Positions 42,907 through 59,280 of a DNA stretch of 64,000 bases are shown here, piece by piece. Origin of the DNA: Salpingoeca rosetta. Taxonomy: Eukaryota > Protista > Choanoflagellata. The notes beneath the pieces are model-generated. The model did not search any database. It had not been told where the DNA came from and saw nothing but the letters and a program-made list of their open reading frames with translations. The translations under genes and the position numbers were made by a program. Location: the NCBI GenBank assembly GCA_033442325.1, contig JAWQFM010000026.1, positions 1,003,093-1,067,092 on the forward strand, given 5' to 3'. Within the stretch, counting starts at the first letter, position 1. Every line of letters starts with the position of its first letter.

Positions 42907-44290
42907 CTAATACGCTGAGCTTGCGTCCACATAACACTTCATTGCCTCTCGCACCAGCTTGACTGCGTGGCCCACTCTCACACCCGCACCTTTCAACATT
43001 TGCATCGTGAGCAAATCCTCATGAACAGACACGACTAGCACCTCCAGGCAGTCGATGCCGTGCTCCACCAGGGCGGACTCGACGTGCGGCAGCAGCGAGT
43101 GGCGGTTGAGCCATTGAACGAGATCTGGCTCAAATGGCAATGAGGAGGACGAGGAGGAAGATGGGGTGGCGGGTGGCGGTGGAGCAGGAGTTGTCGCGGT
43201 GGTGGACGAGAGCGACAAGGAGGACTGCTGGATATGTGGGTGAAAGGGGTGGGTGAAACAGAGTGTGAACGCCAAGCTGCCAGGGATGCGCCTGCAGGCA
43301 TGGACGCGCGCACACACACACACATACACATACACACACACACACAAAAATACCATACCTGCGTGGATCGACGTGCTGTGCCTGCTTCCTGCGTTGTTTG
43401 TTCGTCGCTTCTGGCAGAGACGGCAACCTGGCGCACCTTCTCTGCAATGTCGCGCAGCTGTGACGTGCGGTCCACAACAGCATTCAAAGCAACCACCGCG
43501 TCAATGTCAAACAGTGACAACACAGTCTCACGTACACTCTTGTGCTGCTGTGGCGGTGGCAAGTGTAGCACCTGCGTGAAATACTGGTCCAGCGCTACGG
43601 CTGTCTCCTTGCTTACAACATCTGGCAACGTCATCGCCAGCCGCTTCAGGCGGTCAAACGAGTCGTACTCGCTCACCTCGGCCCTGCTCATGCTGCTGCT
43701 ATCGTTCACATTGTGCCACGCGCTGCCAACAATCACGGGCACGACACGGCGAAGGCGGATCTTGGCGTGTTGCTGCTCCTCGTCTTCTTCGTGCGCCCGC
43801 TGGAACTCGTGCAGCGCCAGCATCGTCATCCACTCCAGCAGCACGTTGTCGCAGTAGTCGCTGTGCTGCAGCTGCCTCATCTGCATGATGGTGGCAGCAG
43901 ACGCGATGGGGCACGCCACCAGACTCAGCCCAATCGCCGTCATGAACGACAACTTGAAGTTGAGGCCCGTCTCCAGGTTGTTGGCGTCCAGGAACGCCAC
44001 CAGGTTGCGCTGCTCCAAGCGCGGATGCAGCGCCATCACCAGCCCACTGCTGGCGCGTTGCCTGTTGTGGTTGCGGGAGAGGGGGGGGGGGGGGGTTGAA
44101 AAAGGTCGTGATGAGATAACGGTAAACTGCATGCATTAGTTGTGGCGAGTTGGTGGAGGTGACAGACACGTACTGGCACAAACACACACACACACACACA
44201 CGCACACACGCACACGCACACACACGCACACGCACACGCTTGCACACGCTCACACGCACACACTTGCACACGCACACACGCACACACGCA

Positions 44291-44383
<93 letters not shown>

Positions 44384-47300
44384 CTCACCTGTAGCTGATG
44401 AAGACGTCGTACTTGTCCTGCAGGCCGAGTACGGGCAAGAGAGGGCCATACTTGGCGACAAGGTCATCGGGCGGCAGCAGCTGCTCGTCCACCCACATGT
44501 CCTGCTTGCTCTTGTGGTGGTGCAGCACATCCTCGAAGAACAGCAGCGTCTTGTCGTCGTACGGCAACAACAGGCTGCTCTTCAGCTCGGGATAGCGCTC
44601 TCTGGCGGCCTCGCTAATCATCTTGTGCAGCATATGCAGCATGGCGCGTGGCTGCGCACTCGTGATCTTCATCTTGATGCCGCCAACAGCCGGCACAAGC
44701 TGCAACTCAAGCTTGGTCGACTCCATGAAGCAGATGGCGTGGGTGCGACTCAGCTTGGGCTGCTGCGATGCGCCGTGCTGTGCATGCGTCATCACATGCG
44801 CTAACACCACCGTAAACAGGCCCTCTGGCAGGAAAGACGCATGCTGTGCGTCTTCAACACGCACGCTCGCCTCTGTCTTGAACTGCTTCAGGCGAAAGGT
44901 GACATACGCCGTCTTCTCCTCAAACCCAAGATATGGATTGACCTGCTGTGCTGCTGTCGTGCTCAGAGTGACAGATTCCATCGTGCTGCTGCTGTGGCGG
45001 ATCGTCATCGGCAGGATGGCTGGGACCAGGTATTGCTGCTGCTGGTGCTGCTGGCGTTGGTGTGCGTCATTGCCCTTGCTCACACCATCGTTGTCACCGT
45101 GGCCGGAGTTGGTGCGGGCGAGCGCTCTGCGGCTGTCCACCAGCTTGGGTGATGCATACTCAATGCACAGCCCATATTGCATCATGAGGCGCAGGAACGG
45201 GTCAACCAAGTTGCTGTCCACGTCTCTCCACAACACCTCCAGCAGACGACGGTGCAGGATGCCGCGGTCGACAAGGTCGTCCCACACGCTGGCGCCAAGT
45301 GCCCGCACCTCCGGCCCCTGCACATCGTCGTCGTGCAGGCCAAACGTGCGGATAACGCGCGTCATCGTGTCCACCGCCCACTGCGGGCTCAGGATCACAT
45401 AGGCCTCCATGCCTGGCACACTGTCGTAGTAGAGCACCATGGAGTACAAGTGCAGGAACTGGAGGCAGGCTCTCGTCTCCTCACGTGTGCGCAGCCCACA
45501 GGTGCGCGCAATCTGGACCACCTCGTCAAACGTGAGCAGCGGCCGTTTCTCGTCGCGGGCAATGGCGTTGAGCTTGTCGTAGAGGTGGAGGTAGGGTACA
45601 GCGACCTCCTGGCTCACGTACTCCTGCGCTAAGGCTGTGGAGGAGATGGTCTGGCGCAGGTCCTGGATCATGGGGTCGCCGATGGACTTGGTGTTGTCGA
45701 CGGGCCAGAACCACAGCTTGTGCTTGCTGTTGTACACAACAGAAGCGAAGGCCGGGTTGTGGCGCAGGCGGCTGTGGATGTCACGCGAGATCTGCTCATG
45801 TTGCTTCCGCTGACTGACCACATCAGCGAAGGTGCCGACGATGAGGACGGGCGCGCCTTTTGCATGGAGGTGGAGAGAAGACAACCAGTGCTCCATAAAC
45901 TCCCACGCCTCTGTCCGCTTGCTCTCGTCTTGGTGCAGCAGGTCCTCCATCGAGAACACCAGCAGGTACACCGCGTACCTGTTGGGGGGATGTTGGGAGT
46001 AAAAGGGTGGGGATGAGAAGGGTAAGGGTTTGGGGGGGGTAGCACTCACACACACGTAGCACNNNNNNNNNNNNNNNNNNNNNNNNNNNNNNNNNNNNNN
46101 NNNNNNNNNNNNNNNNNNNNNNNNNNNNNNNNNNNNNNNNNNNNNNNNNNNNNNNNNNNNNNACACACACACACATACACACACACACACGCACGCACAC
46201 ACACACATACACAGCGACTCACTCTGTGAGGAAGAAAGGGTGGAAGATGTAGAAGGTGGACTGACCGCCCAGGTCAAAGATCTTGAAGGAGACCTGCATC
46301 TTGCCTTCGCCAATTGTCGCATCAAAGTCCATGTCCTTGATTGCCTTCTCCACCTCCTCCTTCGAAACGGATGGTGTGGTCACGGCAACGACGTCAGCAT
46401 TGTCGTCACCAACGTCGGCGTGGCTGGAAGCTGGGTGCTGCTCCTTTGCTGCAGGCGTTGCTTTGGAGGCATCACGACCTGCAGCAGGTGCAGGCACGGC
46501 TGCGGTGGACGCCTTGTCGGATGATGGAGCGGAAGTTGTGGTTGTGCGACGGTCCTTCTTGCACTGCTTCTTGTCATCCGTCCTGGCCTGCTTCTTGGCC
46601 TGCTTCTTGGCCTCCTCGTGCTGTTGCTCGGTAACACGGGTGGCGTGCTGCGCCCGTGCCTTTGCTGACGCGCGCTTCAGCTCCTCGTCCACGCCGGCCT
46701 CGCGTGCCATCGCCGTGCCAACGAGACTGCGGATGAACTCGGACGTGCTCTGGTCGCTCTCCTGCACGAGATGTGGAAGGGTGGGTGTTTGTGAGTGTTG
46801 GTGAACAATGACATAAGGTGGTGATTGATCGAATGATGGTGGAAGCAGGTGTTGGTACAAGGTGGATGCACATATCACACACACACACATACACACACAC
46901 ACCGACAGACAACACACACGCACACACACCGACAGACGACACACACACACACACACACACAATCACGTGCACATACACGCAACTAAACGTACCTTCCAGT
47001 CGCACACTTCCATGGTGTGGACGGTGACTCTCATGTCATCGGTGGTGCGCCGAGCGTGAAGTGCTGCTGCTTGTGAACGGCTTACCCCTGAGCGAGTTCA
47101 CAAGCGTCGTCTTGCCNNNNNNNNNNNNNNNNNNNNNNNNNNNNNNNNNNNNNNNNNNNNNNNNNNNNNNNNNNNNNNNNNNNNNNNNNNNNNNNNNNNN
47201 NNNNNNNNNNNNNNNNNNNNNNNNNNNNNNNNNNNNNNNNNNNNNNNNNNNNNNNNNNNNNNNNNNNNNNNNNNNNNNNNNNNNNNNNNNNNNNNNNNNN

Positions 47301-49699
47301 NNNNNNNNTAAGGCGGATGCGGCAGTTGCCTTTTTACAAGGTGAAAAAAAGTCTGAAGTGGTACAGCAGTGCAAACGACAATGGGTTTCCTGTGCACGTA
47401 CATGCTCTGTATCTGGTGTGTCTGAAGCTGTCATGTCCGCCTGCTGCTGCTCTTGCTTTGGTTGTTGCTGTTGTTGCTGTGGTTGTTGCTGGGGTTTGCT
47501 GTCTGGGTCGAGCCCTGGGATACTGGTGATGGCGTGGAAATTGCGTTTCTGCGCCACCATGAATGGTGTTCCACCCTGTGGATGTTGGATGCGGACAGAG
47601 TGAGCGAGCACAGAAGCAGTGCACGTTGAAAAGAGGCGCGGTTGTGCAATAAAGGCGTCGCACCCACGGCACATGCGCGCGTACCCTGATGTTCTTGACG
47701 GCAGTGTCTGCGCCCTTCTTCAGGAGCAGCTCCACGACGGCGGGCTGGTTGTGCCTGCAGGCAACGTGCAGCGGCGTGTCGCCCTGTGTTTGGGTGGGGG
47801 GGGCAGGAAGGGGCATGGCACGTGTGGTGAGGATCTGTTGAAAACGAACACACGGCCGGTGCAACCATGAGCGAGCGCCGTTCACATACAAGCACAACAC
47901 ACACATGATGAACATACCCGCTTGTCCTGTTGGTTGATGTCTGCATTGTCCTGCTCCATGAGGGAGGTGACAACGGAAGCGTCGCCATCCCTGCAGGCGG
48001 CAAACAGTTGCTCATGCTGCCGCTTCTTCTCCTCGCGTGCTTCGTTAAAGGCGGCCTTGCCCTCATCGTCGTACGCCCTGTGGTAACACGCGACATTGGA
48101 CGCAAGCATCACGCAGCAAGTGTGCGTGAGGTGAAGGGTCGAGAGAAGGCAGGAAGCAAGCGACTAGAGTGGAAGCACGCGTTGACTGACCAATCTGTGT
48201 CGAGTTTTCGGTCGACGGGCAGCGCGGCACCAAAGGCGCGGGCGGTGGCGGTGGAGTTCTTGTTGATCCTAAACGAGGACACGTGGTGGTAGCGTGTGGT
48301 TGGGAACAGGCAGCAAGTGCGGTGCGTGCGTCAGGAGGGTTGGTGGTTAGGGTTGTGGAGAAATGCAAGCAAGCAGAGAGGAACACACACAGTGTGGCGT
48401 GCACTCAAAAGAGTGGCGATTGGTCACACAAATCCACAACAGGACACAGGCGTTCATGAGGCAGGCGCAACGCAATCGACGTACTCAAGCCGAGACAGCG
48501 TGCGGTTTTGGTCCAGTGCGGCACCCAGGGCCGCACCGCCAACCGGGGTGATGGAGTTGTTATACAAGCTGCAAGTGGCAAGAAATGCATGTTGGAAGAG
48601 CAGGGGAACGGGTGGGCAAGCAACACGTGTCAGTGTCATGGATAAAAGTGGGTTGCAGATGGATCACGTGCACGCGTACTCGCTCGCACATCAGGTCCTA
48701 CGACTTTTAAGGCACAATGGCGGAAGCAAAGGGGGCAAATGCAAATTGCACAGGATGTGGCAGCACTTGTGGCACATATGAAGGATGGAAGCATTTGTTG
48801 GTCAAACAAGCAAGTCGCACAGACATCGTGGGTGGCTTGCGGTGCCTCCATCTGCACACGGGTATTGCGGAAGAAGCGCCTAAAGACACACATTGCAAAG
48901 AGGAGCTTCCACTCACTCGAGTGCTGTGAGGGTCGTGTTGTGCTTCAGCATCTCCGCCAACGCCACAGCGCCCTCAGGACCGATGCGGTTGCCTCCCAGG
49001 CTGTCAAGATGGTATGATGCCACACAGGGCGATGATGCCACATGGATGAGGAAGAGTGAGTGAGTGCGTGATGATGCTCGCTGTGGGTGGCAACACAGTC
49101 GTTGAACCCCACCCCATCAACCACACATGTGCGCATGATAAGGTGGAACGGCAGTGACGCAGCATACATGTGCATGTGTGCGTGTACACACTCACCTGAG
49201 TTCTTCGAGGGTCGTGTTGTGCTTCAGCATCTCCGCCAACGCCGCGCCCTCATCGCCGATGGAATTCCATCGCAGGCTGTGCAGACACACAAGAAACGCA
49301 GGGAGCGAAGGTGAACACACGTCCAAACATGCGCCAGCAGGAGAGGAAAGGGGTGCAACATGCAACACCGCCATCCCAATCAACCATGCATATCACACGA
49401 TGCAGATTCATCATCACCACGCACCTGAGTGCTTTGAGGCAGGTGTTGTCCTTGAGCGCCTCGGCCACCGCACGCGCCCCAATGGCGCCGAGGCCAGCAT
49501 TGAAGAAGCTGCAATTCCAAATGGTGTGTGTCATGAAATGAGCAAGAAGAATGAGGATCAAGAGAGCAAAAACGTGAGGGTGCCAGTCACACCCTGCCAC
49601 AAACACACACAGTGTGTCCAGGCGGTGCGAGGGGACGCGCACACGTAAACACCCAACAGCAAGCCACACCAAGCTCATTGCAACACAAGGACAAGCCAA

Positions 49700-49792
<93 letters not shown>

Positions 49793-50014
49793 CAGCACAA
49801 GCACAACCACAAGAAGTGGCCTTGGTGTCCAACACATGCATGCATGTTCCAACACGTCGTTTTGGTTGCTTTTCCACTCAGGCACTCACTGTATTCTATC
49901 CCCACACGTGTTGTTGGCGATGGCCCTGATCTTGTCCTTCACCCCATCCTTCAGCTTCGTCTGCGCCAGCAACGCCTCCACCTCCTCCCTCGCTCTCTTC
50001 TCTCCGCCGGACAT
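42907..50014 (-). CDS. Roco protein: RI/NLRC3-type LRRs, ankyrin repeats, Roc GTPase, COR, TIR, SAM-like domain
   Basis: ATG at 50014 ([16 protein letters not shown]). LRR exons such as [55 protein letters not shown]. Roc motifs [28 protein letters not shown]|EYAVYLLVF and [73 protein letters not shown]-like [33 protein letters not shown]. Stop at 42907-42909. Confidence 0.9.
46063..46162. other. Assembly gap (inside a Roco intron)
   Basis: N run. Confidence 1.
47117..47308. other. Assembly gap hiding the start of the Roc P-loop
   Basis: N run immediately before GKTT on the minus strand. Confidence 1.
49702..49790. repeat. (AG)n microsatellite in Roco intron 1
   Basis: Direct reading. Confidence 0.95.
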
Positions 50015-50543
50015 GGCGACAGCGCGTCGTCTTTTCTCCTTGTGGCTTGTTGTGACGTGTTTGTGAGCGGCTGGCTGGAAGAAGACGACGACAAAATGGA
50101 CGACAACTCAACGCGCTGCTTTGTTTGTTTTCATTTGTTTTGTGTGTGTGTTGTTGTTTTGCGACTCAGCCATTGGACGATTCGCAAAACCTTGCAGAGG
50201 TTATCCGCACAGCAGCGCTTCGGTGGAAGACCATCTCTTCGAGCCCTCGTTCCTGACGGAACACAACAAACAAACAGGATGAAGTGCCTCCAGCCAACCA
50301 GCAGCAACGCAACTCGCTTTGTCGCGCCGAAAGGAACAACAGCCGCTCCCTCCCAGCTTCTTTTGGTCTTGCCTGGTCGGTACAATACACCAATGTCTGT
50401 AGCCACATCAACACCACAAACATCACCGCCGCTCCACCATCACCACCGTCAAGCGGGTCTCATCATCTTCATCGAGCCATTTACTGAGGAAAGAACAGGT
50501 CCGCCACACAATCCAAAACAACGCTCCCCAGTCCAACACACAT

Positions 50544-50600
<57 letters not shown>

Positions 50601-50997
50601 GCCCACACGCAACAGGAAGCCAAGCCAACCAAACAACAGCCAACCCCTCTGCACATCAAACAACACCCTCCAGTCGCAAGCCAGAATCAAATACGCACAG
50701 CAGCAGCAGCAGCACACATCCACCAAACACACCAAAACGTGTTCAGCCGTACACAGCGCCATACAATGAAAACAACAGGCAAGCACAGGAAGGGCGTGAC
50801 ATAAGCAAGCAAGCAAGCAGGCGAGAGGGAGAGTGAAGGAAGGGAAGAAGAGAAGAGAAGAGAAGAGAAGAGAAGAGAAGAGAAGAGAAGAGAAGAGAAG
50901 AAACGGAAACAAGAGGAATGCGACAAAGGAATCAACAGACATTCAGCCATTCGTTCAACTGGTGCACAAGTTGACACGACACATCACAACATGGCGA

Positions 50998-51816
50998 CTA
51001 TGCGGACGAGCCAAGCGCCTTAACAGCGCGCTGCACGCGGGCGTGCACCTCAGGATCCTGCATCAACTGCCCCACCACCCCGTGGGCAGGCGAATCCTGC
51101 ATGTTCTACGAGAGGAAACGACATGAGGGCGTGAGAATGAGGAGAGGAAGGAGGAGGAGGAGGAGGAGGAGGAGGAGGAGGATGGGAAAGTACACGAAGT
51201 ACACGACAGTCGCGCATATTCGAGGCAGCAAACACACACACACACACACATCACATAAATCACACACAACACAACCCACGCACCATGAGGCTGTGTACAT
51301 GCCCTGGCAGTGGGGCTCGTCGACGGCGGCCGCCGGGGTGCCAATCATCTGCACAAACAAACGCCCGCACAATCTTCACCGGGCTCTCAGGCGCGGTCAC
51401 GCGTGGATCTTGCCTACAGAAGCAACAACAAAAGGAAGGAGAGGGAGGTACAGGAAGCAATGAGGAGGGGGACGGGAGAGTCAGTCGGGAACAAGAACGA
51501 CAGGCGACAGAGCACACCACCGACACATGCAGCACGACCAGGCCATGCACACACACATAGACACACACACACACTCACACACAAAACACAGTGGTAGCAC
51601 TCACGCTTAAAAGAGCTCGACGAGGTATGTGTAGATGCACTTTGCTTCATCGTCGTCTTCTGTAATGGGCAGCCAGTCAAGCAGATGCGTCAGCATCTCG
51701 TCTGTGCAAGGGTTGGTAGTAGATGGGTGGATGAGGAGGTCAAGAATAAGCGACGAAAACGTGACAACAAGAGCAAACAACCAAAGCAAAAAGGACGGCG
51801 AAGAAGGAGTGTAGCA

Positions 51817-51892
<76 letters not shown>

Positions 51893-52135
51893 TTGAGAGG
51901 CCGTGTGCTGGGTTGCGTGCAATCTTGACAAAGACGGAGATGCAGTTCTCGGTCGCGCTGGTGTTGGGCGATTCGCGGGAGCCGGGCACCCTGGATCACA
52001 GCGAGCAGCGACTCAACAGCCTGAACGCGGCAGGACGACAAGGGGCAGCGGTGAGGCTTGGCAGGACGACAAGGGGCAGCGGTGAGGCTTGGCAAGGCGA
52101 AAGTGGAGAAAGGAGGGAAACGACGAAGCGACATG

Positions 52136-52224
<89 letters not shown>

Positions 52225-52480
52225 CCTTGAGCGCACCTTGTGTGGATGTATGTGGGTTGTGGATCCTCCTCCTCAATCTGGGCGGCGCTGGCTTGCATAA
52301 TGCACATGAGCTCGTGTGCATCCGGCGCAAACATGTTCTTGCAAACAAACACGCCCACAGGCCGCGCAGCATGCGGTATTGCCTGTCGTTTGCGTGTTGG
52401 AGAATGTTCTTCATAAACGGCACAGAATCGTTGTCGTAGTCCAAAAACCGCTCCTGCGCCACGTTGGCCAGCACATGCGT
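50998..52480 (-). pseudogene. Importin-5 (karyopherin beta-3/IPO5)-like pseudogene fragments
   Basis: Matches PFMKNILQHANDRQYRMLRG, MFAPDAHELM..EEEDPQPTY, ATENCISVFVKI and LLDWLPITEDDDEAKCIYTYLVEL. Frameshifts at about 52360, 51990 and 51355, and large parts of the protein are absent. Weaker remnants may extend to about 54060. Confidence 0.75.
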
Positions 52481-53382
52481 GCCAACCAGAAACACGGTGG
52501 CCACCCCCTTGCTGCCGCTGCAACCAGTGAGGAGTGCAAACACACCATCACCTCATCAACTGCCGCTGTTGTTGTCATGGCGTGCAGCACCACCACAACA
52601 ACCGCCACAATCACGGCCATTCTCTCTTCAAACAACGGTGTGGTGGTCCACGAGCAAACAGCATCCACCGCAGTGAGCTGCTTGAAACCGGCAGCGTGCA
52701 GCGACGGCTGTGGCCGCGGTGGGATGCCTCGCTGGCAGCAGATGAGGTGGCGGAAAACAGCAGCAGTTGTGGTTGAAGCTGAGGTGATTGAGATGGGCAG
52801 GGAGAAGCACAGCTAGCAGCGGGAAACTGGTTGACAAAGGGCCTTGAGTGCACCGCCACAACGCCGCGCAGGACAGCAAGCAGTGCAGCTGTTGCTGTGT
52901 TGGCGTGGTGTGGTTGACGATGGCGTGAATACGCATGCATGCACACACACATGGCAGTGTCGGGGATGGCGATGATGATGTGGGGCCACGTGCTGGCAGC
53001 ACTCAATCACAGCAAAGGTGCAATGCCCGTCGCTGTCGGTGGCTGCGGTTGGTTGATGCGGCGTTGCAGTGACGGTGTGTGTGGGTGGTTGGCTGCAGCA
53101 GCAGAGCCTGCGTTGGGTCGGAATCGGTGTGTGCACGCGTGCAACGGGAGGGTGGGGAAGCAAGATGCAGGCGCCCCACTGGGCGGGGGTGATGTGACCT
53201 GTGTGAAGACAAAAAAGGAGAGAAGGGAGAACTGACGATTAGAAGCTGTCGTGCACGACGTGCCAGTGTAGCCCTGCATCAGCACAGTGGGGGAGTTTGA
53301 ATGGTGTTATGTTGACGAGGCGTGGTCGGTGTGCGTGGTTGCTTCGACATGCGGGAGGGGCAACGAGTGCAAATGAATTCAA

Positions 53383-53460
<78 letters not shown>

Positions 53461-54585
53461 ACACACACACACACACACACACCTCTTGTGCGGCGCTGGG
53501 AGCGATGCCTGCTGGTGCGTGTCAACCAGCAGCGCTAGTGGTGTCAGCCATGGCGGCATGGAAGCGGAAGTGTGGTGGCGGGATCCTTCACCTCAACACA
53601 CATTCCAGCCACCACGCTGGAGACCACGAGCTGGCTCACTGTCTCCATGCCCGTGCATGGCACCGACCGCCGTATGGCAGCGGTGATGACAATGTCAGAG
53701 GCCTGCTCTGAAGCAAGCACACATCGTGACAGGGGTTAAGGAGAGAGTGTGTGTGTTGGGGGGGGGGAGGTGTGGGATGTGATTGACGAGGGGAGGTGGT
53801 TGACAAGAACAAAGACGTGCTGAGGGGATAAGTGGGGGAAGAAGGCGTGCAGTGGTGTGCATGTCGCGTCACACAGCACATTGAGGTGCAGTGCAGTGGA
53901 ATGGAAATCCCAGGCAACACCCCCCCCCCACGCCATCAGCCACACACATACCGAGACAGAGCGAGAGAGAAGGAAGTGCCTCTTGTTGTCGTGGCACACG
54001 GTGCTGTCGTTCAAGCCACCATCATCATCCTCATTGTCAGCATTTCATACCTGCTGCTGTAAGCCTGCCAAACAGGTGGTGGTGGTGGAGATGAAGACGC
54101 GCAGCGTTGCAGCCAAAAGCAAAGGGGGAGGTGAGAGGCATGTGACTTGAGCCGTGTGAGTGAGGGGGGGGGGAGAAGAGATGGTGTGCAGAGAGCAGGT
54201 CAAGCAAGGGGTGTGCAAGGGAAAGAAAGGGAGAGTGGACTGCGAGGCAGGGAGGAACAGTGTAAAGGAAGCAGAGCTGTGAGTACAACACACACGCACG
54301 CACCATGTGGTGGACGTGTCGCTCGTCCAAGTGGAGTGAATGAATACTTGTCCCTTTGTTTGGCTTGCTTGCTTCTTGCTTGTGTGCTTGCTCGTCTGCT
54401 TGATTGATTGATTGATGGATTGCTTGTGTCATTGTCATCATCATCAATATCCCGCTGCTCCCTGCTGGTGTTGTTGTTGTGGTTGTTGTTGTTGTTGTTG
54501 TGGTTGTTGTTGTGGCTGAGCATGTGACCAAACCACCACACACCATCACCTCCCCATCCATCCTTTCCTTTCGTCGCAGCAAATG

Positions 54586-54686
<101 letters not shown>

Positions 54687-55022
54687 CGTGCATTGCGCGC
54701 AACCAGCCACGACAAACGACTGTTGTGCGTGTTTGTGCAGAAGAAGACGGGGAAACCTGAAATCAGTCGATGACACGACTGTGGAGATGCAGCAGCTCAA
54801 ACTTGCTTGCACTCGCTTCTTCTTCTTCTTCTTCTTGCTCTCTTTGCTGCAGTGCACACAGCTAGGCAAGGCAAGACAAGGAAGGAAGGAGGGGGTGATG
54901 TGGCAGTCACCGCAACAGCAGCATGGGGAGAAGAGAGATGTGGGAGAGGGGAAGAGGAGATTGTTGGCGATCGCTACCCAGTCACCAACAGCCAACCAGA
55001 CCAATGTGGAAGAAAGGTCGTT

Positions 55023-55086
<64 letters not shown>

Positions 55087-55095
55087 CACACACAT

Positions 55096-55148
<53 letters not shown>

Positions 55149-56799
55149 CACACAAAGTAGGCGTCACGTCAACTATCCCCAGGTGAGCCAACACACATCA
55201 TGCCCACTGTTCCTTCCTCGACTTCTGCTTCTGCTTCTTCTTTTTCTTGGGCACTATTCGTTCGCTCCATGCGTCACGCAACCAAGTATGTGAACGTGGG
55301 ACGCGGTGTCCTGTTTGTGGTGGCAGTGCTGTCGGTTGTTGCTGTTGCTGTCTTGTTGTGGGTGTGTTTGTGAACTCCCTTCTTTCCTTCTTCTTGTGGC
55401 ACAAGGATGTGTGCAGGGGGCTGTGGGTCTGCTGAAAGTGGTGGTTTCGTCGTCGTCAGGTCGTCGTTGTTGTGCTTGGCTGACGTGAAGAAGTGCTGTT
55501 CTCTTGTGATTGGACAAGGCAGTGGCCTGCAGAAACAATGCCCCTGAGAGTGCACTGGCAACATGTGCCGCTGACATACGCATACCACAAGGCAAGCGAC
55601 TAGCAGTGTCATTCACGGCCACCTGCGAGGTGGGTGCAATCACACCTCCGCTCGTGTGTGTTGTGCGTGTGTGTGTATCAGTGCACGGTGGTGATCCGAT
55701 ATCCAAACCACAGCCACTGCTGTCACTGCTGCTGTCTTGCTGCTGCTGGTGCTGCTGCTGTTGGCACGTGTGTTCTCACGGTTGCATCCTCTCTTCCTCC
55801 CACGCAAACAACAAACAGACAGGAATCGGCAAGTGAGAGTGGCGGATACCAAGGCACCAGCAATACAGAAGGCCGCGTTTGAGTGGGACGCACCTCCACA
55901 AGGGTCGTGATCACAGTCATACATCATTCATCCCCCAGCTTGCAATCAAGTCAGTTACACATCATTCATCCTCCAGCCTGCAATCAAGTCAGTTTACATG
56001 GCATACACGCTGTAGGTGCTCATCACCTGCCCCATGCACACGTGGTTTTCACGCACACACCCCACAGCAGCCCGCTTGCGTGGCATCATCTGGCTGGACA
56101 TGAGTGTTGGGGATGATGATGGCATGCCCACGTCTCAGCATGACAGTGAGCGATGTGTGTGTGTGTGTGTGTGTTTCTCATTCGGCAACCGTGTGATGAC
56201 GGCTCATCACTCCTGCACACGTTCCCTCGCTCACTGCAACACCCATCTCGCCACCGTTAGCGACCAGGTTGCCATCCACTGGATGCCCTTGATTGCGTCG
56301 ATGGAGCAGAGTGTTGGTAACATTGGCAAGGTGCTGCTCATGGCGGGACAGAGCGAATGCTTTCAAAAGTATGCGCACACTGTATGTGTAGGCGTGTGTG
56401 CATATGTGACGTCGACGTGGTCATTCTGCCATGCGTCTGCTGTGGGTTCTTTGCTTGCAATCGTTTGATCTTGTGCTACGATGTGTTGTCCTGATCTCTG
56501 TTCCTCGTGCGTGTTTGGGCCACAGGGTACACCTGGAAGCTGAAGAGAGGAAGGGAGACGCTGCTCCGGCACAAGGATGATGGTGACATGAGGTGCGACC
56601 ACCGAATTGTGTTTTTGTTACGGGTGCATTGCCGCCGCCGCCGCTGCTGCTGCTGCTGCTGCTGCTGGTGGAGGTGTGTACCTGCACACACTGAACCACT
56701 CATCACTCGCTATCGTCTTGCAATCCTTCTGTGCGGCTCTCTTCGCGGCTTCGTCTTCACAGCTTCATGTCTGCCGAAGAGAATGAACTCTTTGACACA

Positions 56800-56842
<43 letters not shown>

Positions 56843-56981
56843 CCGTATGTGTGTGTGTGTGCGTGTGTGTGCAGCAGTTCGTTGCAGATATCTCCCAACA
56901 CTCCCCCCATCCCCTTTCATCCGCGCGTCTCACCACACAACAAACGCACCCATCGTCTCCACCACAACCACCACTGTTACC

Positions 56982-58895
56982 AGAACGCACTGCCCCGAGA
57001 TGCCGCTGCACTATCGCACTGCCAATGACGGCCCTGATGTCAGCGATCACCGCACGGCATATCCGTCGATCCTCTTCGCACGTGCCCATCGTTCAAGGTG
57101 AAGACCTGCCAACACAGCAACAGCAACAGCAACGGCGTGGAATGGCGTGCAACCGAAGCATGATGACCTCACACTCTCTGCCTGCTTGTGTGTTATGATT
57201 GCGTGTTCATGCGTGCGTGCATCTATGGCAGGTGTACGTGTATCCTCTGACTGCTGATGAAGAGGCCGTCCCTGCCAGCCATCTACCGCGCCATCCGAAC
57301 CGCCATCCGTGACGGCCCGTACAGCACCGATGACCCGTCCAGGGCTTGCCTCCTCGTCCCAGGCACCGACGTGTCGTGCTGGTGTGAAGGTGCGCTGTGT
57401 GTTTGTGTTTGTGTTGTGTGTGTGTGTGTGTCGCGTCGGTGCAGATGCACGGGCTTCCACAGCCGTCACCATCACCACCACCACCTCATAATTGTGTGTG
57501 CGTGCTTGTGACTGAAAGATTGCATGCACGACAAGTACTCTGACAACATTGAGTCGATTCATCCCGTGAGCGCAGCCATCGAGCGCAATCTCTCCAGCTG
57601 AGGTGGTGGTTTGTTGTTGCTTGTGGTGCTTGTGGTGCTGGTGGTCCGTGTGGATTGTGGTATCTTGCGTGTGAGAGGACCTGCGCTCATGGATGCCTTC
57701 CAAACACACACAACAATACACGTGATGCATGGCAGACTTGCGTATTGGAACGAGGCCCGCTACCATATCCTGTTTGAGTACAGCGATGCACCATGTCTCC
57801 CTGGCATGCAGAACACGGCATTCTTGCAAAAGGTACAATGTGTGTGTGTGTGTGTGTTGGAACATGACTGTGCGTGCCTGCGCTCACCATCGACGACTGC
57901 TGTTGCTTACACTTCACCAATGCCGCCTTGTTTCTCTTCACCACCTGCATCAGGTTGGCCTGAGCGAATTCCACCACCGTGACGGCCTCGGTGTGTCCAT
58001 GCCACTCTTCTCCATGGTGACATGCATTCATTCACACCGAAGCAGCGACGCGTTCCGCCCGCACAAACAGGAAATACCTCGTCACCTTCAGGTGTGTGCA
58101 TGCATCCGTGTGTGGTGTGACGTGGTGCGATGTGAGGTTCGATGTTTACTGCTGCTGCTGGGAGTTTTGAGGGGTCGGTGTCGCTCACTGCACCACCACT
58201 CGCCCTTCTTGTAACCGCTGCGATCTCACTCCAAACATGTTGTGGTGCCGCTGCTTGACATGTGTCTTCTTTCCCTGTTGTGCAGGGGTACCACCAAGTC
58301 TGCTCGTTCTTGATGCCATGTGCAACCACCTCCCCAGGCTGCACAATGGCAGGTATGGTGTGCTATGCGTGCGAGTGTTGTGTGTTCTTGTGTTCCGTGT
58401 GTGTTGTGTGTTGTGGTGGAGTCAGCTGGTTTTGGTGCTGTGTGCGTATCTGTCTGGATCCACCTCACACACGCACACACATCGTCTCTTTGTACGTTTG
58501 CTTGTGTATGCACGTTTGCAGGGACATTGTGTTGGTGTGCGCGTGCCGGTGGTTTGGCGAAGAGCGCATGAGCCGTGAGGGGGAAGGTTGGATATGACCC
58601 CTCATGTAAGCAGGCAGAGGAAGAGTTCAACAAGTACACGTACACGGATCTGGCGCTGAAGACCAAGGTTGGGCTCATCGTGGAAGGATTTGGCGACCAC
58701 TCCTGGTGTGTGTGTGTGTGTGTGTCTGTGTGTGTCTGTGTCTGTGTGTCTGTATGTTGCAAACGATTTCGGGCCTGTTTGTGGTCTCACCCATCTTCCA
58801 TCTCCTGTAACCCCCTTTCATGCCTCGTTGATCATGGCTGCGGGTGCCATCCCCGTCATTGTCGTCGATCACTACGTGCTGGATGAATGGCACAT

Positions 58896-58962
<67 letters not shown>

Positions 58963-59200
58963 AGATGTACCCCTCCCGTCGCTCATGGTGCTGCGATGTG
59001 ATGTGCTGGCGTTTGCTTTTTGCATTCTTGCAGCCCTACCAGGACCTTCTGGACTGGGAGACGTTTAGCATTCGCATTCCCGAGCACAGACTCCTCGAGG
59101 TGTGGTAACAGATCGGTGACATGGGGATGTCAAGCGATGCGTGAGGAGGGATGCGTTTTGATGGGGATTGTGTTTGGTCATAGCTTGTATGCCACGTCGC

Positions 59201-59280
<80 letters not shown>

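What the first reader, a model, noticed from the sequence alone, without database searches (positions are those of the whole stretch)
48485..49508. One LRR per symmetric exon with conserved cores and variable ends: a shuffle-ready sensor
Seen: four LRR exons of 84, 81, 84 and 84 nt (49425-49508, 49196-49276, 48917-49000, 48485-48568), all phase 2-2, so any can be skipped, duplicated or swapped in frame. Two neighbours share an identical 37-nt core (GGCGTTGGCGGAGATGCTGAAGCACAACACGACCCTC) but differ at the exon ends (LRWN vs LGGN; EELR vs TALD), which encode the xxLxLxx ligand face. Known: LRR exon shuffling has been reported in brown-algal ROCO genes. Inference: recognition is diversified by recombination, gene conversion or splicing.
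Basis: partly seen in the sequence, partly recalled or inferred. Interest (0 to 1): 0.75.

Follow-up and report, generated by a model that had tools for sequence, protein, structure and literature searches.

The report
Hypervariable subtelomeric LRR-exon receptor gene
The sensor end of a Salpingoeca rosetta LRR-ankyrin-Roc-COR-TIR-SAM gene is built from one-repeat 84-base exons whose ligand-facing codons change about 3.4 times more than neutral sites, and it belongs to a family of about 27 arrays, mostly near chromosome ends, that gain, lose and recombine these units: an immune-receptor-like design in a close unicellular relative of animals.

Summary
On the minus strand, exons of 84, 81, 84 and 84 nt, plus a fifth of 78 nt, are all phase 2-2. 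Exons B and C share an exact 37-nt core. One slip: the residue after EEL is Ser, not Arg.

The gene is PTSG_08722 of Salpingoeca rosetta, 14-20 kb from a contig end.

It is not single-copy. A 23-nt piece of the core occurs 119 times in about 27 arrays. 83 of the 100 listed copies lie within 80 kb of contig ends. Arrays carry 2 to at least 9 middle repeats.

Across 50 such exons, nucleotide difference is 0.04 in the core, 0.16 in introns and 0.60 at the exon-edge codons. Non-synonymous change at the xxLxLxx codons is 3.4 times intron divergence (95% CI 2.7-4.5).

Introns flanking one exon have unrelated histories (Mantel r = -0.04; within an intron r = 0.74). In the five most recent duplications the copied unit runs from core to core and carries one whole beta-strand with its intron.

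So diversification by recombination and positive selection is supported. Splicing is untested, and sensor function is inferred.

The design is known from brown-algal ROCO and vertebrate NOD/NLRC genes. This scan has already reported the same family from other pieces of this genome.

The parts
49890..50014 (-). Exon 1 (ATG at 50014; 41 codons + 2 bases, ends in phase 2); no LRR, no signal-peptide-like start
   Evidence: identical to the N-terminus of P0169; 86-90% identical to exon 1 of paralogues at other contig ends
49425..49508 (-). LRR exon A, 84 nt, phase 2-2: conserved 'cap' repeat ([27 protein letters not shown]), present as the first LRR in every paralogue examined
49277..49424 (-). Cap-type intron (148 nt), about 97% identical to the first LRR intron of the C27 paralogue
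49196..49276 (-). LRR exon B, 81 nt, phase 2-2, 'middle' hypervariable class. It is the C27 unit-3 exon minus one codon (GCT)
   Evidence: (3.8% difference from L009_3)
49207..49243 (-). 37-nt conserved core in exon B (encodes [12 protein letters not shown])
   Evidence: a 23-nt part of it is exact in 64 exons genome-wide
49001..49195 (-). Intron B-C (195 nt), middle type, nearly identical to the C27 intron 3-4 up to the acceptor
48917..49000 (-). LRR exon C, 84 nt, phase 2-2, 'middle' hypervariable class ([27 protein letters not shown])
48928..48964 (-). 37-nt conserved core in exon C
48985..49206 (-). One complete beta-strand face (x2 x3 L x5 L x7 x8 N x10) split by intron B-C. Codons EE-L-(AG|C) lie at 49196-49206 and L-GG-N-R at 48985-48999. 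This is the core-to-core unit type that recent duplications copy whole
48485..48568 (-). LRR exon D, 84 nt, phase 2-2: conserved 'terminal' repeat ([24 protein letters not shown]), preceded by a 348-nt intron as in paralogues
48191..48268 (-). Exon E, 78 nt, phase 2-2: degenerate C-terminal LRR cap ([25 protein letters not shown])
47918..48077 (-). Exon F: linker and start of the ankyrin repeats
42910..47783 (-). Rest of the gene: ankyrin repeats, Roc GTPase (interrupted by N gaps at 47121-47308 and 46063-46161), COR, TIR, SAM
49764..59202 (.). Shared subtelomeric block, colinear at 86-94% with the distal 10 kb at contig ends C27, C28, C13, C29 and partly C14. Its proximal edge lies inside the LRR array

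Best explanation
The stretch is the N-terminal ribonuclease-inhibitor-type LRR domain of PTSG_08722. This is a cytosolic LRR-ankyrin-Roc-COR-TIR-SAM protein of Salpingoeca rosetta, and the smallest member, with two variable repeats, of a mostly subtelomeric family of about 27 arrays.

Each 28-residue repeat is one 84-nt phase-2 exon. The intron falls in the x5 codon of LxxLxLxxN, so every beta-strand of the concave face is assembled from the 3' end of one exon and the 5' end of the next.

Shown here: the family evolves by gain, loss and exchange of roughly 275-bp exon-plus-intron units within and between chromosome ends. Junctions lie inside the exons or at their edges. The solvent-exposed codons are driven apart by positive diversifying selection, while the scaffold core is under purifying selection.

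Inferred: the variable concave face binds diverse ligands. Binding would release the Roc-COR GTPase switch and trigger the TIR NADase, with the SAM domain driving oligomerisation. That would make this an innate-immune or non-self receptor.
For: - Exon structure and phase.
- RI-type LRR: LRR_6 scores 61.9 bits on P0169, and the best solved LRR relatives are an RI-like protein, LRRC34 and NOD2.
- Roc scores 35 bits and COR-A 64 bits, both above the cut-offs; TIR_2 scores 23.9 bits against a cut-off of 28.
- Family size: the 23-nt core occurs 119 times, with 0 in the reversed control. The 360-nt exon-intron-exon stretch matches 115 places at 68-91% identity.
- Location: 83 of the 100 listed core copies lie within 80 kb of a contig end, and the distal flank is colinear with other ends.
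- Repeat number: 2 to at least 9 middle exons per array.
- Divergence: core 0.042, introns 0.160, hypervariable sites 0.601.
- Nei-Gojobori estimates: dN at the six most variable edge codons (the five xxLxLxx codons plus x10) is 0.97, against dS of 0.18 for the rest of the exon and 0.18 for introns; dN/dS for the rest is 0.38.
- Bootstrap over loci on the five a-priori xxLxLxx codons: pN(hypervariable)/p(intron) = 3.4, 95% CI 2.7-4.5.
- Histories uncouple across an exon (Mantel r = -0.04) but not across an intron (r = 0.74).
- The 5' hypervariable block tracks the upstream intron and the 3' block tracks the downstream intron.
- Five of the five most recent duplicates are core-to-core units.
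- Junctions in this gene against the C27 array.
- A S. rosetta TIR makes cADPR (preprint 10.64898/2026.04.20.719644).
Against: - No ligand, expression or phenotype data exist.
- The immune role is inferred from architecture and from the mode of evolution.
- Pairwise counts ignore phylogeny and recombination, and the hypervariable sites are near saturation.
- The data are paralogues from one 2013 Sanger/454 assembly with N gaps inside some arrays. Some mosaicism could therefore be assembly error, and repeat counts are lower bounds.
- In this copy the Roc G1 region is broken by two 1-nt deletions beside a gap, so this particular gene may be a pseudogene or may simply be mis-sequenced.
- The own-gene junctions sit at the acceptor sites, not in the core, so no single breakpoint rule holds.
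Confidence: 0.75

Rival explanations
1. Relaxed constraint only: the exon-edge residues are free surface positions that drift, and the conserved core merely reflects folding constraints. There would be no selection for diversity.
For: Surface residues of repeat proteins are usually the least constrained. The core shows ordinary purifying selection (dN/dS 0.25).
Against: Drift cannot exceed the neutral rate. Non-synonymous difference at the a-priori xxLxLxx codons is 0.54, against 0.16 in the adjacent introns and 0.15 at synonymous sites of the same exons, a ratio of 3.4 (95% CI 2.7-4.5). Units whose introns differ by only 3-6% already differ at about 25% of bases in the hypervariable blocks.
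Confidence: 0.05
2. Splicing is the main diversifier: symmetric exons are skipped or chosen combinatorially to make many receptor isoforms from one gene, as proposed for human NLRP3 and for brown-algal ROCOs.
For: All LRR exons are phase 2-2 and 78-84 nt long, so any skip keeps the frame. The precedent is in PMC6642158 and PMC11378527.
Against: The public collection holds one protein for this gene. The only annotated 'variant' in the family (PTSG_12139) starts at an internal Met and skips no exon. The splice sites are uniform and strong (tgacag / gtgagt). With only two variable repeats, this gene has little to choose from. No transcript data were examined, so this is absence of evidence only.
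Confidence: 0.1
3. Programmed or somatic rearrangement: subtelomeric arrays act as donor cassettes that are copied into expressed genes at high frequency during clonal growth, in the manner of lamprey VLR or trypanosome VSG.
For: The family is subtelomeric and nearly all copies share one orientation. The conserved cores could serve as short homology tracts, and mosaic units are shared between ends.
Against: Every array examined is a complete gene, with exon 1, a cap exon, splice sites and a downstream Roc, not a set of silent cassettes. Divergence between the most similar units at different ends is 3.8-6.5%, which indicates evolutionary rather than somatic time scales. No incomplete 'acceptor' locus was seen.
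Confidence: 0.04
4. The variable LRR face serves self/non-self or mating-type-like recognition between S. rosetta cells, or binds fast-evolving endogenous partners, rather than sensing pathogens. The analogy is with fungal HET/NWD incompatibility NLRs.
For: The evolutionary signature is the same as in the Podospora NWD/HET genes: highly conserved repeats, a few hypervariable interface positions, and repeat shuffling within and between paralogues (PMC4986451). TIR and HET domains are related according to that paper.
Against: Nothing tested here distinguishes this from pathogen sensing. The protein has no signal peptide or membrane segment, so it would have to meet foreign cytoplasm, and cell fusion is limited to mating in this species (my own knowledge).
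Confidence: 0.12
5. Assembly artefact: mis-joined reads from near-identical subtelomeric repeats create the apparent mosaics and the differences in repeat number.
For: The assembly is a 2013 Sanger/454 hybrid. N gaps lie inside the arrays on C15 and C13. There are 454-type homopolymer indels beside a gap in this gene.
Against: Units differ by about 16% in their introns, enough to place Sanger reads that span 2-3 units. The hypervariable-versus-intron contrast is a per-site property that mis-joining cannot create. The same exon order is seen in overlapping independent fetches (L009/L010, L008/L020).
Confidence: 0.04

Closest known systems
Brown-algal ROCO genes with LRR exon shuffling (Zambounis et al. 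2012; Teng et al. 2024, PMC11378527)
   Same: N-terminal LRRs in front of Roc-COR; one LRR per exon; all introns in phase 2; repeat-number differences between paralogues; diversifying selection on the LRRs; proposed immune-receptor role.
   Different: The algal exons are 72 bp and encode 23-24-residue repeats with the consensus LxxLxxLxxLxLxxNxL; here they are 84 bp and encode 28-residue RI-type repeats. The algal proteins are LRR-Roc-COR only; here ankyrin, TIR and SAM are added. Clustering near chromosome ends and the core-to-core exchange unit are shown here; the passages of the algal paper that I read do not mention them. Stramenopiles and opisthokonts are far apart, so the shared design is probably convergent.
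Vertebrate NOD/NLRC LRR domains (Hoss et al. 2019, PMC6642158; NOD2 structures 5IRL/5IRM)
   Same: RI-class LRR; one 28-residue repeat per frame-preserving exon; the exon border always falls at the same point inside the beta-strand. By sequence, NOD2 is among the best solved relatives of this LRR (E = 6e-22).
   Different: The switch domain here is Roc-COR, not NACHT. Vertebrate NOD/NLRC repeats are not near-identical at the DNA level, and the passage of PMC6642158 that I read says nothing about hypervariable edges or a subtelomeric multigene family. Whether the intron position is homologous was not tested, because no animal gene was fetched.
Fungal NLR-like proteins with highly internally conserved WD/ANK/TPR repeats (Podospora NWD/HET family; Dyrka et al. 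2014, PMC4986451)
   Same: Near-identical repeats with a few hypervariable positions on the binding surface; positive diversifying selection at those positions; repeat shuffling and exchange within and between paralogues; variation in repeat number.
   Different: The fungal repeats are WD, ANK or TPR, lie C-terminal to a NACHT or NB-ARC domain, and are encoded without an intron in each repeat. Here they are LRRs, N-terminal to Roc-COR, with an intron inside every beta-strand.
Lamprey and hagfish variable lymphocyte receptors
   Same: LRR cassettes with conserved segments usable as short homology and with variable concave-face residues; diversity comes from combining cassettes.
   Different: VLRs are assembled somatically from silent flanking cassettes into an incomplete germline gene. 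Here every array is an intact spliced gene, and the exchanges look evolutionary (at least 3.8% divergence between ends).
SARM1 (ARM-SAM-SAM-TIR NADase)
   Same: A TIR domain combined with a SAM domain and a repeat-domain regulator. A S. rosetta TIR was reported to make cADPR.
   Different: The domain order is different and SARM1 has no Roc-COR. The TIR of this gene was not studied here; see the earlier scan note s1-436034.

Membership tests
ROCO proteins (Roc-COR tandem) | Roc (Ras of complex) GTPase domain | tested here: met
   PF08477 scores 35.0 bits on P0169 against a cut-off of 27, and GKTTLVNSL and DLGGQ motifs are present in the DNA. Caveat: in this assembly the G1 region is interrupted by an N gap and two 1-nt deletions.
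ROCO proteins (Roc-COR tandem) | COR domain directly C-terminal of Roc | tested here: met
   COR-A (PF16095) scores 64-67 bits against a cut-off of 35.3. COR-B scores only 15.9 bits in this gene and 21.1 bits in the C26-start paralogue, below the cut-off of 27.
RI-like (ribonuclease-inhibitor class) LRR | 28-29-residue repeats matching LxxLxLxx(N/C)xL...; the Pfam model is LRR_6 | tested here: met
   LRR_6 scores 61.9 bits in 3 stretches on P0169. Single exons score 20-23 bits because each repeat is split by an intron. The best solved LRR relatives are an RI-like protein, LRRC34 and NOD2.
Brown-algal 'exon-shuffling' ROCO genes | One LRR per exon, all in phase 2 | tested here: met
Brown-algal 'exon-shuffling' ROCO genes | 72-bp exons encoding 23-24-residue LRRs; LRR-Roc-COR as the only architecture | tested here: not met
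   Exons here are 84 (81, 78) nt and of RI type. Ank, TIR and SAM domains are present.
Brown-algal 'exon-shuffling' ROCO genes | Alternative splicing of the LRR exons | not testable with these tools
   No transcript reads are available. There is one protein per gene in the collection, and the single 'variant' is an N-terminal truncation.
Animal NLRs (NOD/NLRC) | Central NACHT NTPase domain | tested here: not met
   No NACHT hit on P0169 or P0160; Roc-COR takes its place.
Animal NLRs (NOD/NLRC) | One 28-residue RI-type LRR per frame-preserving exon, with the border inside the beta-strand | tested here: met
   compared with the description in PMC6642158. Homology of the intron position itself was not tested.
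Receptors under diversifying selection at the LRR xxLxLxx face (as in plant R genes; my own knowledge) | Non-synonymous rate at the solvent-exposed beta-strand codons exceeds the neutral rate | tested here: met
   pN(hypervariable) is 0.54 against p(intron) 0.16 and pS(rest) 0.15; the ratio is 3.4, CI 2.7-4.5. This is a pairwise method with no codon model.
VLR-type somatic cassette assembly | An incomplete germline gene plus silent donor cassettes, with somatic rearrangement | tested here: not met
   Every array examined has exon 1, a cap exon, consensus splice sites and a downstream Roc. Somatic change itself cannot be tested here.

The most novel reading that the evidence does not exclude
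The roughly 27 arrays form an actively diversifying repertoire. Ectopic recombination between chromosome ends, seeded in the near-identical exon cores, would create new beta-strand combinations and repeat numbers fast enough to differ between isolates or even between long-kept clonal lines. That would be a unicellular counterpart of cassette-based receptor diversification in the sister group of animals. The 84-nt RI-type LRR exon would then be the same ancestral module that NOD/NLRC genes still use.
Probability: 0.1. Interest if true: 0.9.

Novelty: new variant of a known kind. Interest (0 to 1): 0.6.

Why it matters
Choanoflagellates are the closest living relatives of animals, and S. rosetta can be manipulated genetically. 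A large, fast-evolving family that joins a hypervariable LRR sensor to a GTPase switch and a TIR NADase would be a tractable model for how intracellular pattern recognition worked before animals existed. It would also show how receptor diversity can be generated without NACHT domains.

The exon layout matches that of vertebrate NOD/NLRC genes, which raises a testable question: does this LRR exon module predate animals?

The analysis adds a mechanistic point. The conserved exon core, not the intron, is where exchange happens in the recent events, so the unit inherited together is a whole beta-strand with its intron.

I found no paper in the searchable library that describes this family in S. 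rosetta. The proteins are in public databases as 'hypothetical'.

Tried and rejected
The analysis therefore rests on 11 loci and 50 middle exons, and array lengths elsewhere come only from hit coordinates.
- Pfam on single exons gives sub-threshold LRR_6 scores because the intron splits each repeat. This was resolved with the public protein P0169.
- The word-based protein search cannot reach full-length relatives from single exons. I therefore used the representative search with the COR exon, and then P0003 as a full-length query. Most hits to that region were unrelated ankyrin proteins.
- I looked for exon-skipped isoforms in cluster members. None was found; the 'variant' P0205 is an N-terminal truncation.
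- The nearest-neighbour concordance test was much weaker than the Mantel test: 6 of 39 across an intron against 0 of 28 across an exon. I report it as supporting evidence only.
- My first idea, that all breakpoints lie in the core, was corrected by the own-gene comparison, where the similarity switches at the acceptor sites.
- No structure was predicted. P0169 and P0160 exceed the 1200-residue limit, and a cut-out or joined LRR sequence has no reference. Placement of the variable residues on the concave face therefore rests on general LRR knowledge.
Exons were searched one by one by reference. The frame check across junctions was done inside a script on window.fa. Whole-protein searches used public proteins returned by the tools.
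- A telomere-repeat search shows TTAGGG tracts at some contig ends but not at the end of this window.
Full report
**1. The observation.**
The gene lies on the minus strand. Each is bounded by ...cag| and |gtgagt, |gtgcgt or |gtacgt.

Each exon begins with the last base of a split codon and ends with the first two bases of the next, so all are phase 2-2. Exon 1 (50014-49890, 125 nt) also ends in phase 2. A fifth symmetric exon, 48268-48191 (78 nt), follows.

A script on window.fa showed that the frame runs through all junctions. The resulting N-terminus is identical to the public protein P0169, which is PTSG_08722 or XP_004990516.1 of Salpingoeca rosetta and lies on a contig of 1,067,092 bases.

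The 37-nt core is exact in exons B and C. No other match with up to 3 mismatches occurs in the window, and none in 100 shuffles.

The residue after EEL is Ser (AG|C), not Arg.

**2. What the gene is.**
Scanned exon by exon by reference, Pfam gives LRR_6 just under its cut-off, because every repeat is split by an intron. It also gives Ank, COR-A (67 bits), weak Roc and weak SAM_2.

On the public full-length model the scores are LRR_6 61.9 bits, Ank_2 46, Roc 35, COR-A 64 and TIR_2 23.9. The C26-start paralogue P0160 adds TIR, COR-B and SAM_2.

Among solved structures, the LRR part is closest to an RI-like protein, LRRC34 and NOD2 (5IRL/5IRM, E = 6e-22).

The protein is therefore a ROCO-family GTPase with an N-terminal ribonuclease-inhibitor-type LRR domain, ankyrin repeats, and a TIR-SAM tail. 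It has no signal peptide.

Whole-protein searches used proteins that the tools returned.

**3. It is not single-copy.**
The 360-nt stretch of exon B, its intron and exon C matches 115 places in the genome at 68-91% identity, introns included. Most matches fall in tandem series with a period of 265-285 bp.

A 23-nt piece of the core occurs 119 times with up to 2 mismatches, 64 of them exact. The reversed control gives 0. The copies fall into about 27 arrays.

The Roc-COR exon gives 58 matches at 67-95% DNA identity, from some 40 paralogous loci.

**4. Location.**
The window is the last 64 kb of contig C26, so the gene lies 14-20 kb from the contig end.

Using contig lengths, 83 of the 100 listed core copies, in 20 of 25 loci, lie within 80 kb of a contig end. 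At most about 20% of the genome lies in that zone.

With one exception (C30:24 kb), the subtelomeric copies are transcribed away from the contig end.

Window 49,764-59,202, on the telomere side of the gene, is colinear at 86-94% with the distal 10 kb at the ends of C27, C28, C13 and C29, and partly C14. [quoted passage not shown]

The proximal edge of this shared block lies inside the LRR array. On C34 and C27 the same exon 1, cap exon and variable exons lead into a different Roc domain with no ankyrin repeats.

**5. Anatomy of the arrays.**
Every array has the same layout:
- a conserved cap exon ([27 protein letters not shown]);
- a 150-nt intron;
- a run of 'middle' exons of 84 nt, separated by introns of 170-216 nt;
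- a roughly 348-nt intron;
- a conserved terminal exon ([24 protein letters not shown]).

The number of middle exons is 2 in this gene, at C14 and at the C26 start. It is 5 on C36, at least 6 on C15, at least 8 on C28 and C27, and at least 9 on C34. N gaps inside the arrays on C15 and C13 make these counts lower bounds.

Exon B of this gene is the family's 84-nt exon minus one codon.

**6. Conserved core, hypervariable edges.**
I compared 50 middle exons from 11 loci. Per-site nucleotide diversity is 0-0.08 through the core. It reaches 0.6-0.76, near saturation, at the first and second positions of codons 2, 3 and 26 and of the split codon.

In LRR numbering these are x7, x8, x3 and x5 of L1-x-x-L4-x-L6-x-x-N9. 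Codon 25 (x2) and codon 5 (x10) are also variable.

Mean pairwise difference is 0.042 in the core, 0.160 in the introns and 0.601 at the hypervariable sites.

Nei-Gojobori counts give dN = 0.97 at the six most variable edge codons (the five xxLxLxx codons plus x10). This compares with dS = 0.18 in the rest of the exon and d = 0.18 in the introns. dN/dS is 0.38 for the rest and 0.25 for the core.

Synonymous and intron divergence agree, so the core needs no special explanation beyond purifying selection.

Bootstrapping over loci, with the hypervariable set fixed beforehand as the five xxLxLxx codons, gives pN(hypervariable)/p(intron) = 3.4 (95% CI 2.7-4.5) and pN(hypervariable)/pS(rest) = 3.5 (2.8-4.3). 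Drift cannot exceed the neutral rate, so this is positive diversifying selection.

The caveats are that the counts are pairwise, the sequences recombine, and all data come from one assembly.

**7. What is exchanged.**
I compared distance matrices of the two intron flanks on either side of an exon: the last 110 nt upstream and the first 110 nt downstream, only 84 nt apart. They are uncorrelated (Mantel r = -0.04, p = 0.48). The two halves of a single intron correlate strongly (r = 0.74, p < 0.001).

The 5' hypervariable block follows the upstream intron (r = 0.20, p = 0.009) and not the downstream one. The 3' block does the reverse (r = 0.24, p = 0.008). The two blocks of one exon are independent (r = 0.03).

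Five intron pairs are nearly identical (d <= 0.02), and all five are duplications within the arrays on C34, C28 and C27. In these pairs:
- the upstream exon's 3' block differs at 0, 0, 0, 0 and 2 of 17 nt;
- the downstream exon's 5' block is identical in all five;
- the outer blocks differ at 3-10 positions.

The recently copied unit therefore runs from core to core. It carries one complete beta-strand, for example TLERL-D-LFGND three times on C34, with the intron in its middle.

The own gene shows a second pattern:
- The cap exon plus the 148-nt intron is about 97% identical to the cap and first intron of C27.
- Exon B plus intron B-C is about 98% identical to unit 3 of C27.
- The similarity switches exactly at the two acceptor sites.

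So this gene looks like a C27-type array that has lost unit 2 and is joined to a different exon C.

Junctions thus fall inside the exons or at their edges, and not within the introns. Because exchange is guided by homology of the cores, symmetric phase is not what keeps DNA-level shuffling in frame. Phase would matter only for exon skipping.

**8. Splicing.**
No transcript reads could be examined. The protein collection holds one sequence for this gene.

The one annotated 'variant' in the family is PTSG_12139, P0205 against P0270. It starts at an internal Met within an LRR and skips nothing.

**9. How it probably works.**
Shown here:
- the exon architecture;
- the family, its location near contig ends, and its repeat-number differences;
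- positive selection on the face codons;
- recombination junctions.

Inferred from established knowledge of LRR proteins, ROCO GTPases and TIR enzymes:
- The concave face binds variable ligands.
- The LRR holds Roc-COR in an off state until a ligand binds.
- Dimerisation or oligomerisation, helped by SAM, then activates the TIR NADase.

A 2026 preprint reports cADPR production by a S. rosetta TIR from a protein drawn with LRR, Roc and COR domains. An allorecognition role, like that of fungal HET/NWD genes, fits the same signature and is kept as a rival.

**10. Comparison with what is known.**
Brown-algal ROCO genes have one LRR per 72-bp phase-2 exon, exon shuffling, diversifying selection and splice variants (PMC11378527). 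The design is the same, but the repeat class differs, the algal proteins lack Ank, TIR and SAM, and the lineage is very distant.

Human NOD and NLRC genes encode one 28-residue RI-type LRR per frame-preserving exon, with the border at a fixed point in the beta-strand (PMC6642158). The exon module is the same, but the switch domain is NACHT.

Fungal NLR-like genes have near-identical repeats with hypervariable interface positions and repeat shuffling within and between paralogues (PMC4986451). The mode of evolution is the same, but the repeats and the gene structure differ.

Searches of the held library found no paper describing this family in S. rosetta.

Earlier reports of this scan, on other pieces of the same genome, reached the same family-level reading. 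I reached mine independently before reading them. The core-to-core unit, the own-gene junctions and the block-edge observation may be additions.

**11. Verdict.**
It needs amending on the unit of exchange, and it is untested on splicing and on function. This is a new variant of a known kind. The interest is moderate to high for the origin of animal innate immunity, but the scan has already noted the family elsewhere.

Noticed in passing
window 47040-47320 (minus strand): Compared with the close C9 paralogue, the Roc G1 region ([11 protein letters not shown]...) has two 1-nt deletions in short homopolymers, at about 47075 and 47047, right beside the N gap at 47121-47308. The public model PTSG_08722 reads around them and lacks the P-loop. 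These are either 454 homopolymer errors or this copy is a pseudogene.
   Followed up: partly
window 49764-59202: About 9.4 kb on the telomere side of the gene is colinear at 86-94% with the ends of contigs C27, C28, C13 and C29, and partly C14. It is a shared subtelomeric block whose proximal edge lies inside the LRR array. I did not examine what else it encodes.
   Followed up: partly
L020:3599-4942 (C34) and L010 (C27): The longest arrays (at least 8-9 variable exons) are followed directly by a different, diverged Roc domain (32.6 bits) with no ankyrin repeats. The same exon 1 and LRR units therefore sit on at least two ROCO backbones. Earlier scan notes call one such subfamily ROCO-PARP; I did not check the C-terminus.
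   Followed up: partly
L002:1015-1491 (C15:13764-14239): One unit in the C15 array carries a 14-nt deletion between GGCG repeats in the exon core, leaving a 70-nt exon that would shift the frame if spliced in. It is a decayed unit, or possibly an assembly error.
   Followed up: no
window 49712-49790; 44140-44390; 46163-46215; 46870-46990: There is a long (GA)n tract in intron 1 and (CA/GT)n tracts in several introns of the gene. Two of these abut assembly gaps.
   Followed up: no
P0205 vs P0270 (PTSG_12139, contig of 1,890,124 bases): The annotated 'variant' isoform of a paralogue starts at the Met of the conserved AEMLKH core. It removes exon 1, the cap repeat and part of the first variable repeat, which suggests an alternative start or a truncated transcript.
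   Followed up: partly
window 42910-43300 (minus strand): The gene ends in a SAM-like domain after the TIR domain (SAM_2 at 17-21 bits). This TIR+SAM pairing recalls SARM1.
   Followed up: no
G000:C32:761387-762977: The closest Roc-COR paralogue (95% DNA identity) lies 27 kb from the end of contig C32. No LRR array of this type was listed next to it, so a gap or a different N-terminus is possible.
   Followed up: no
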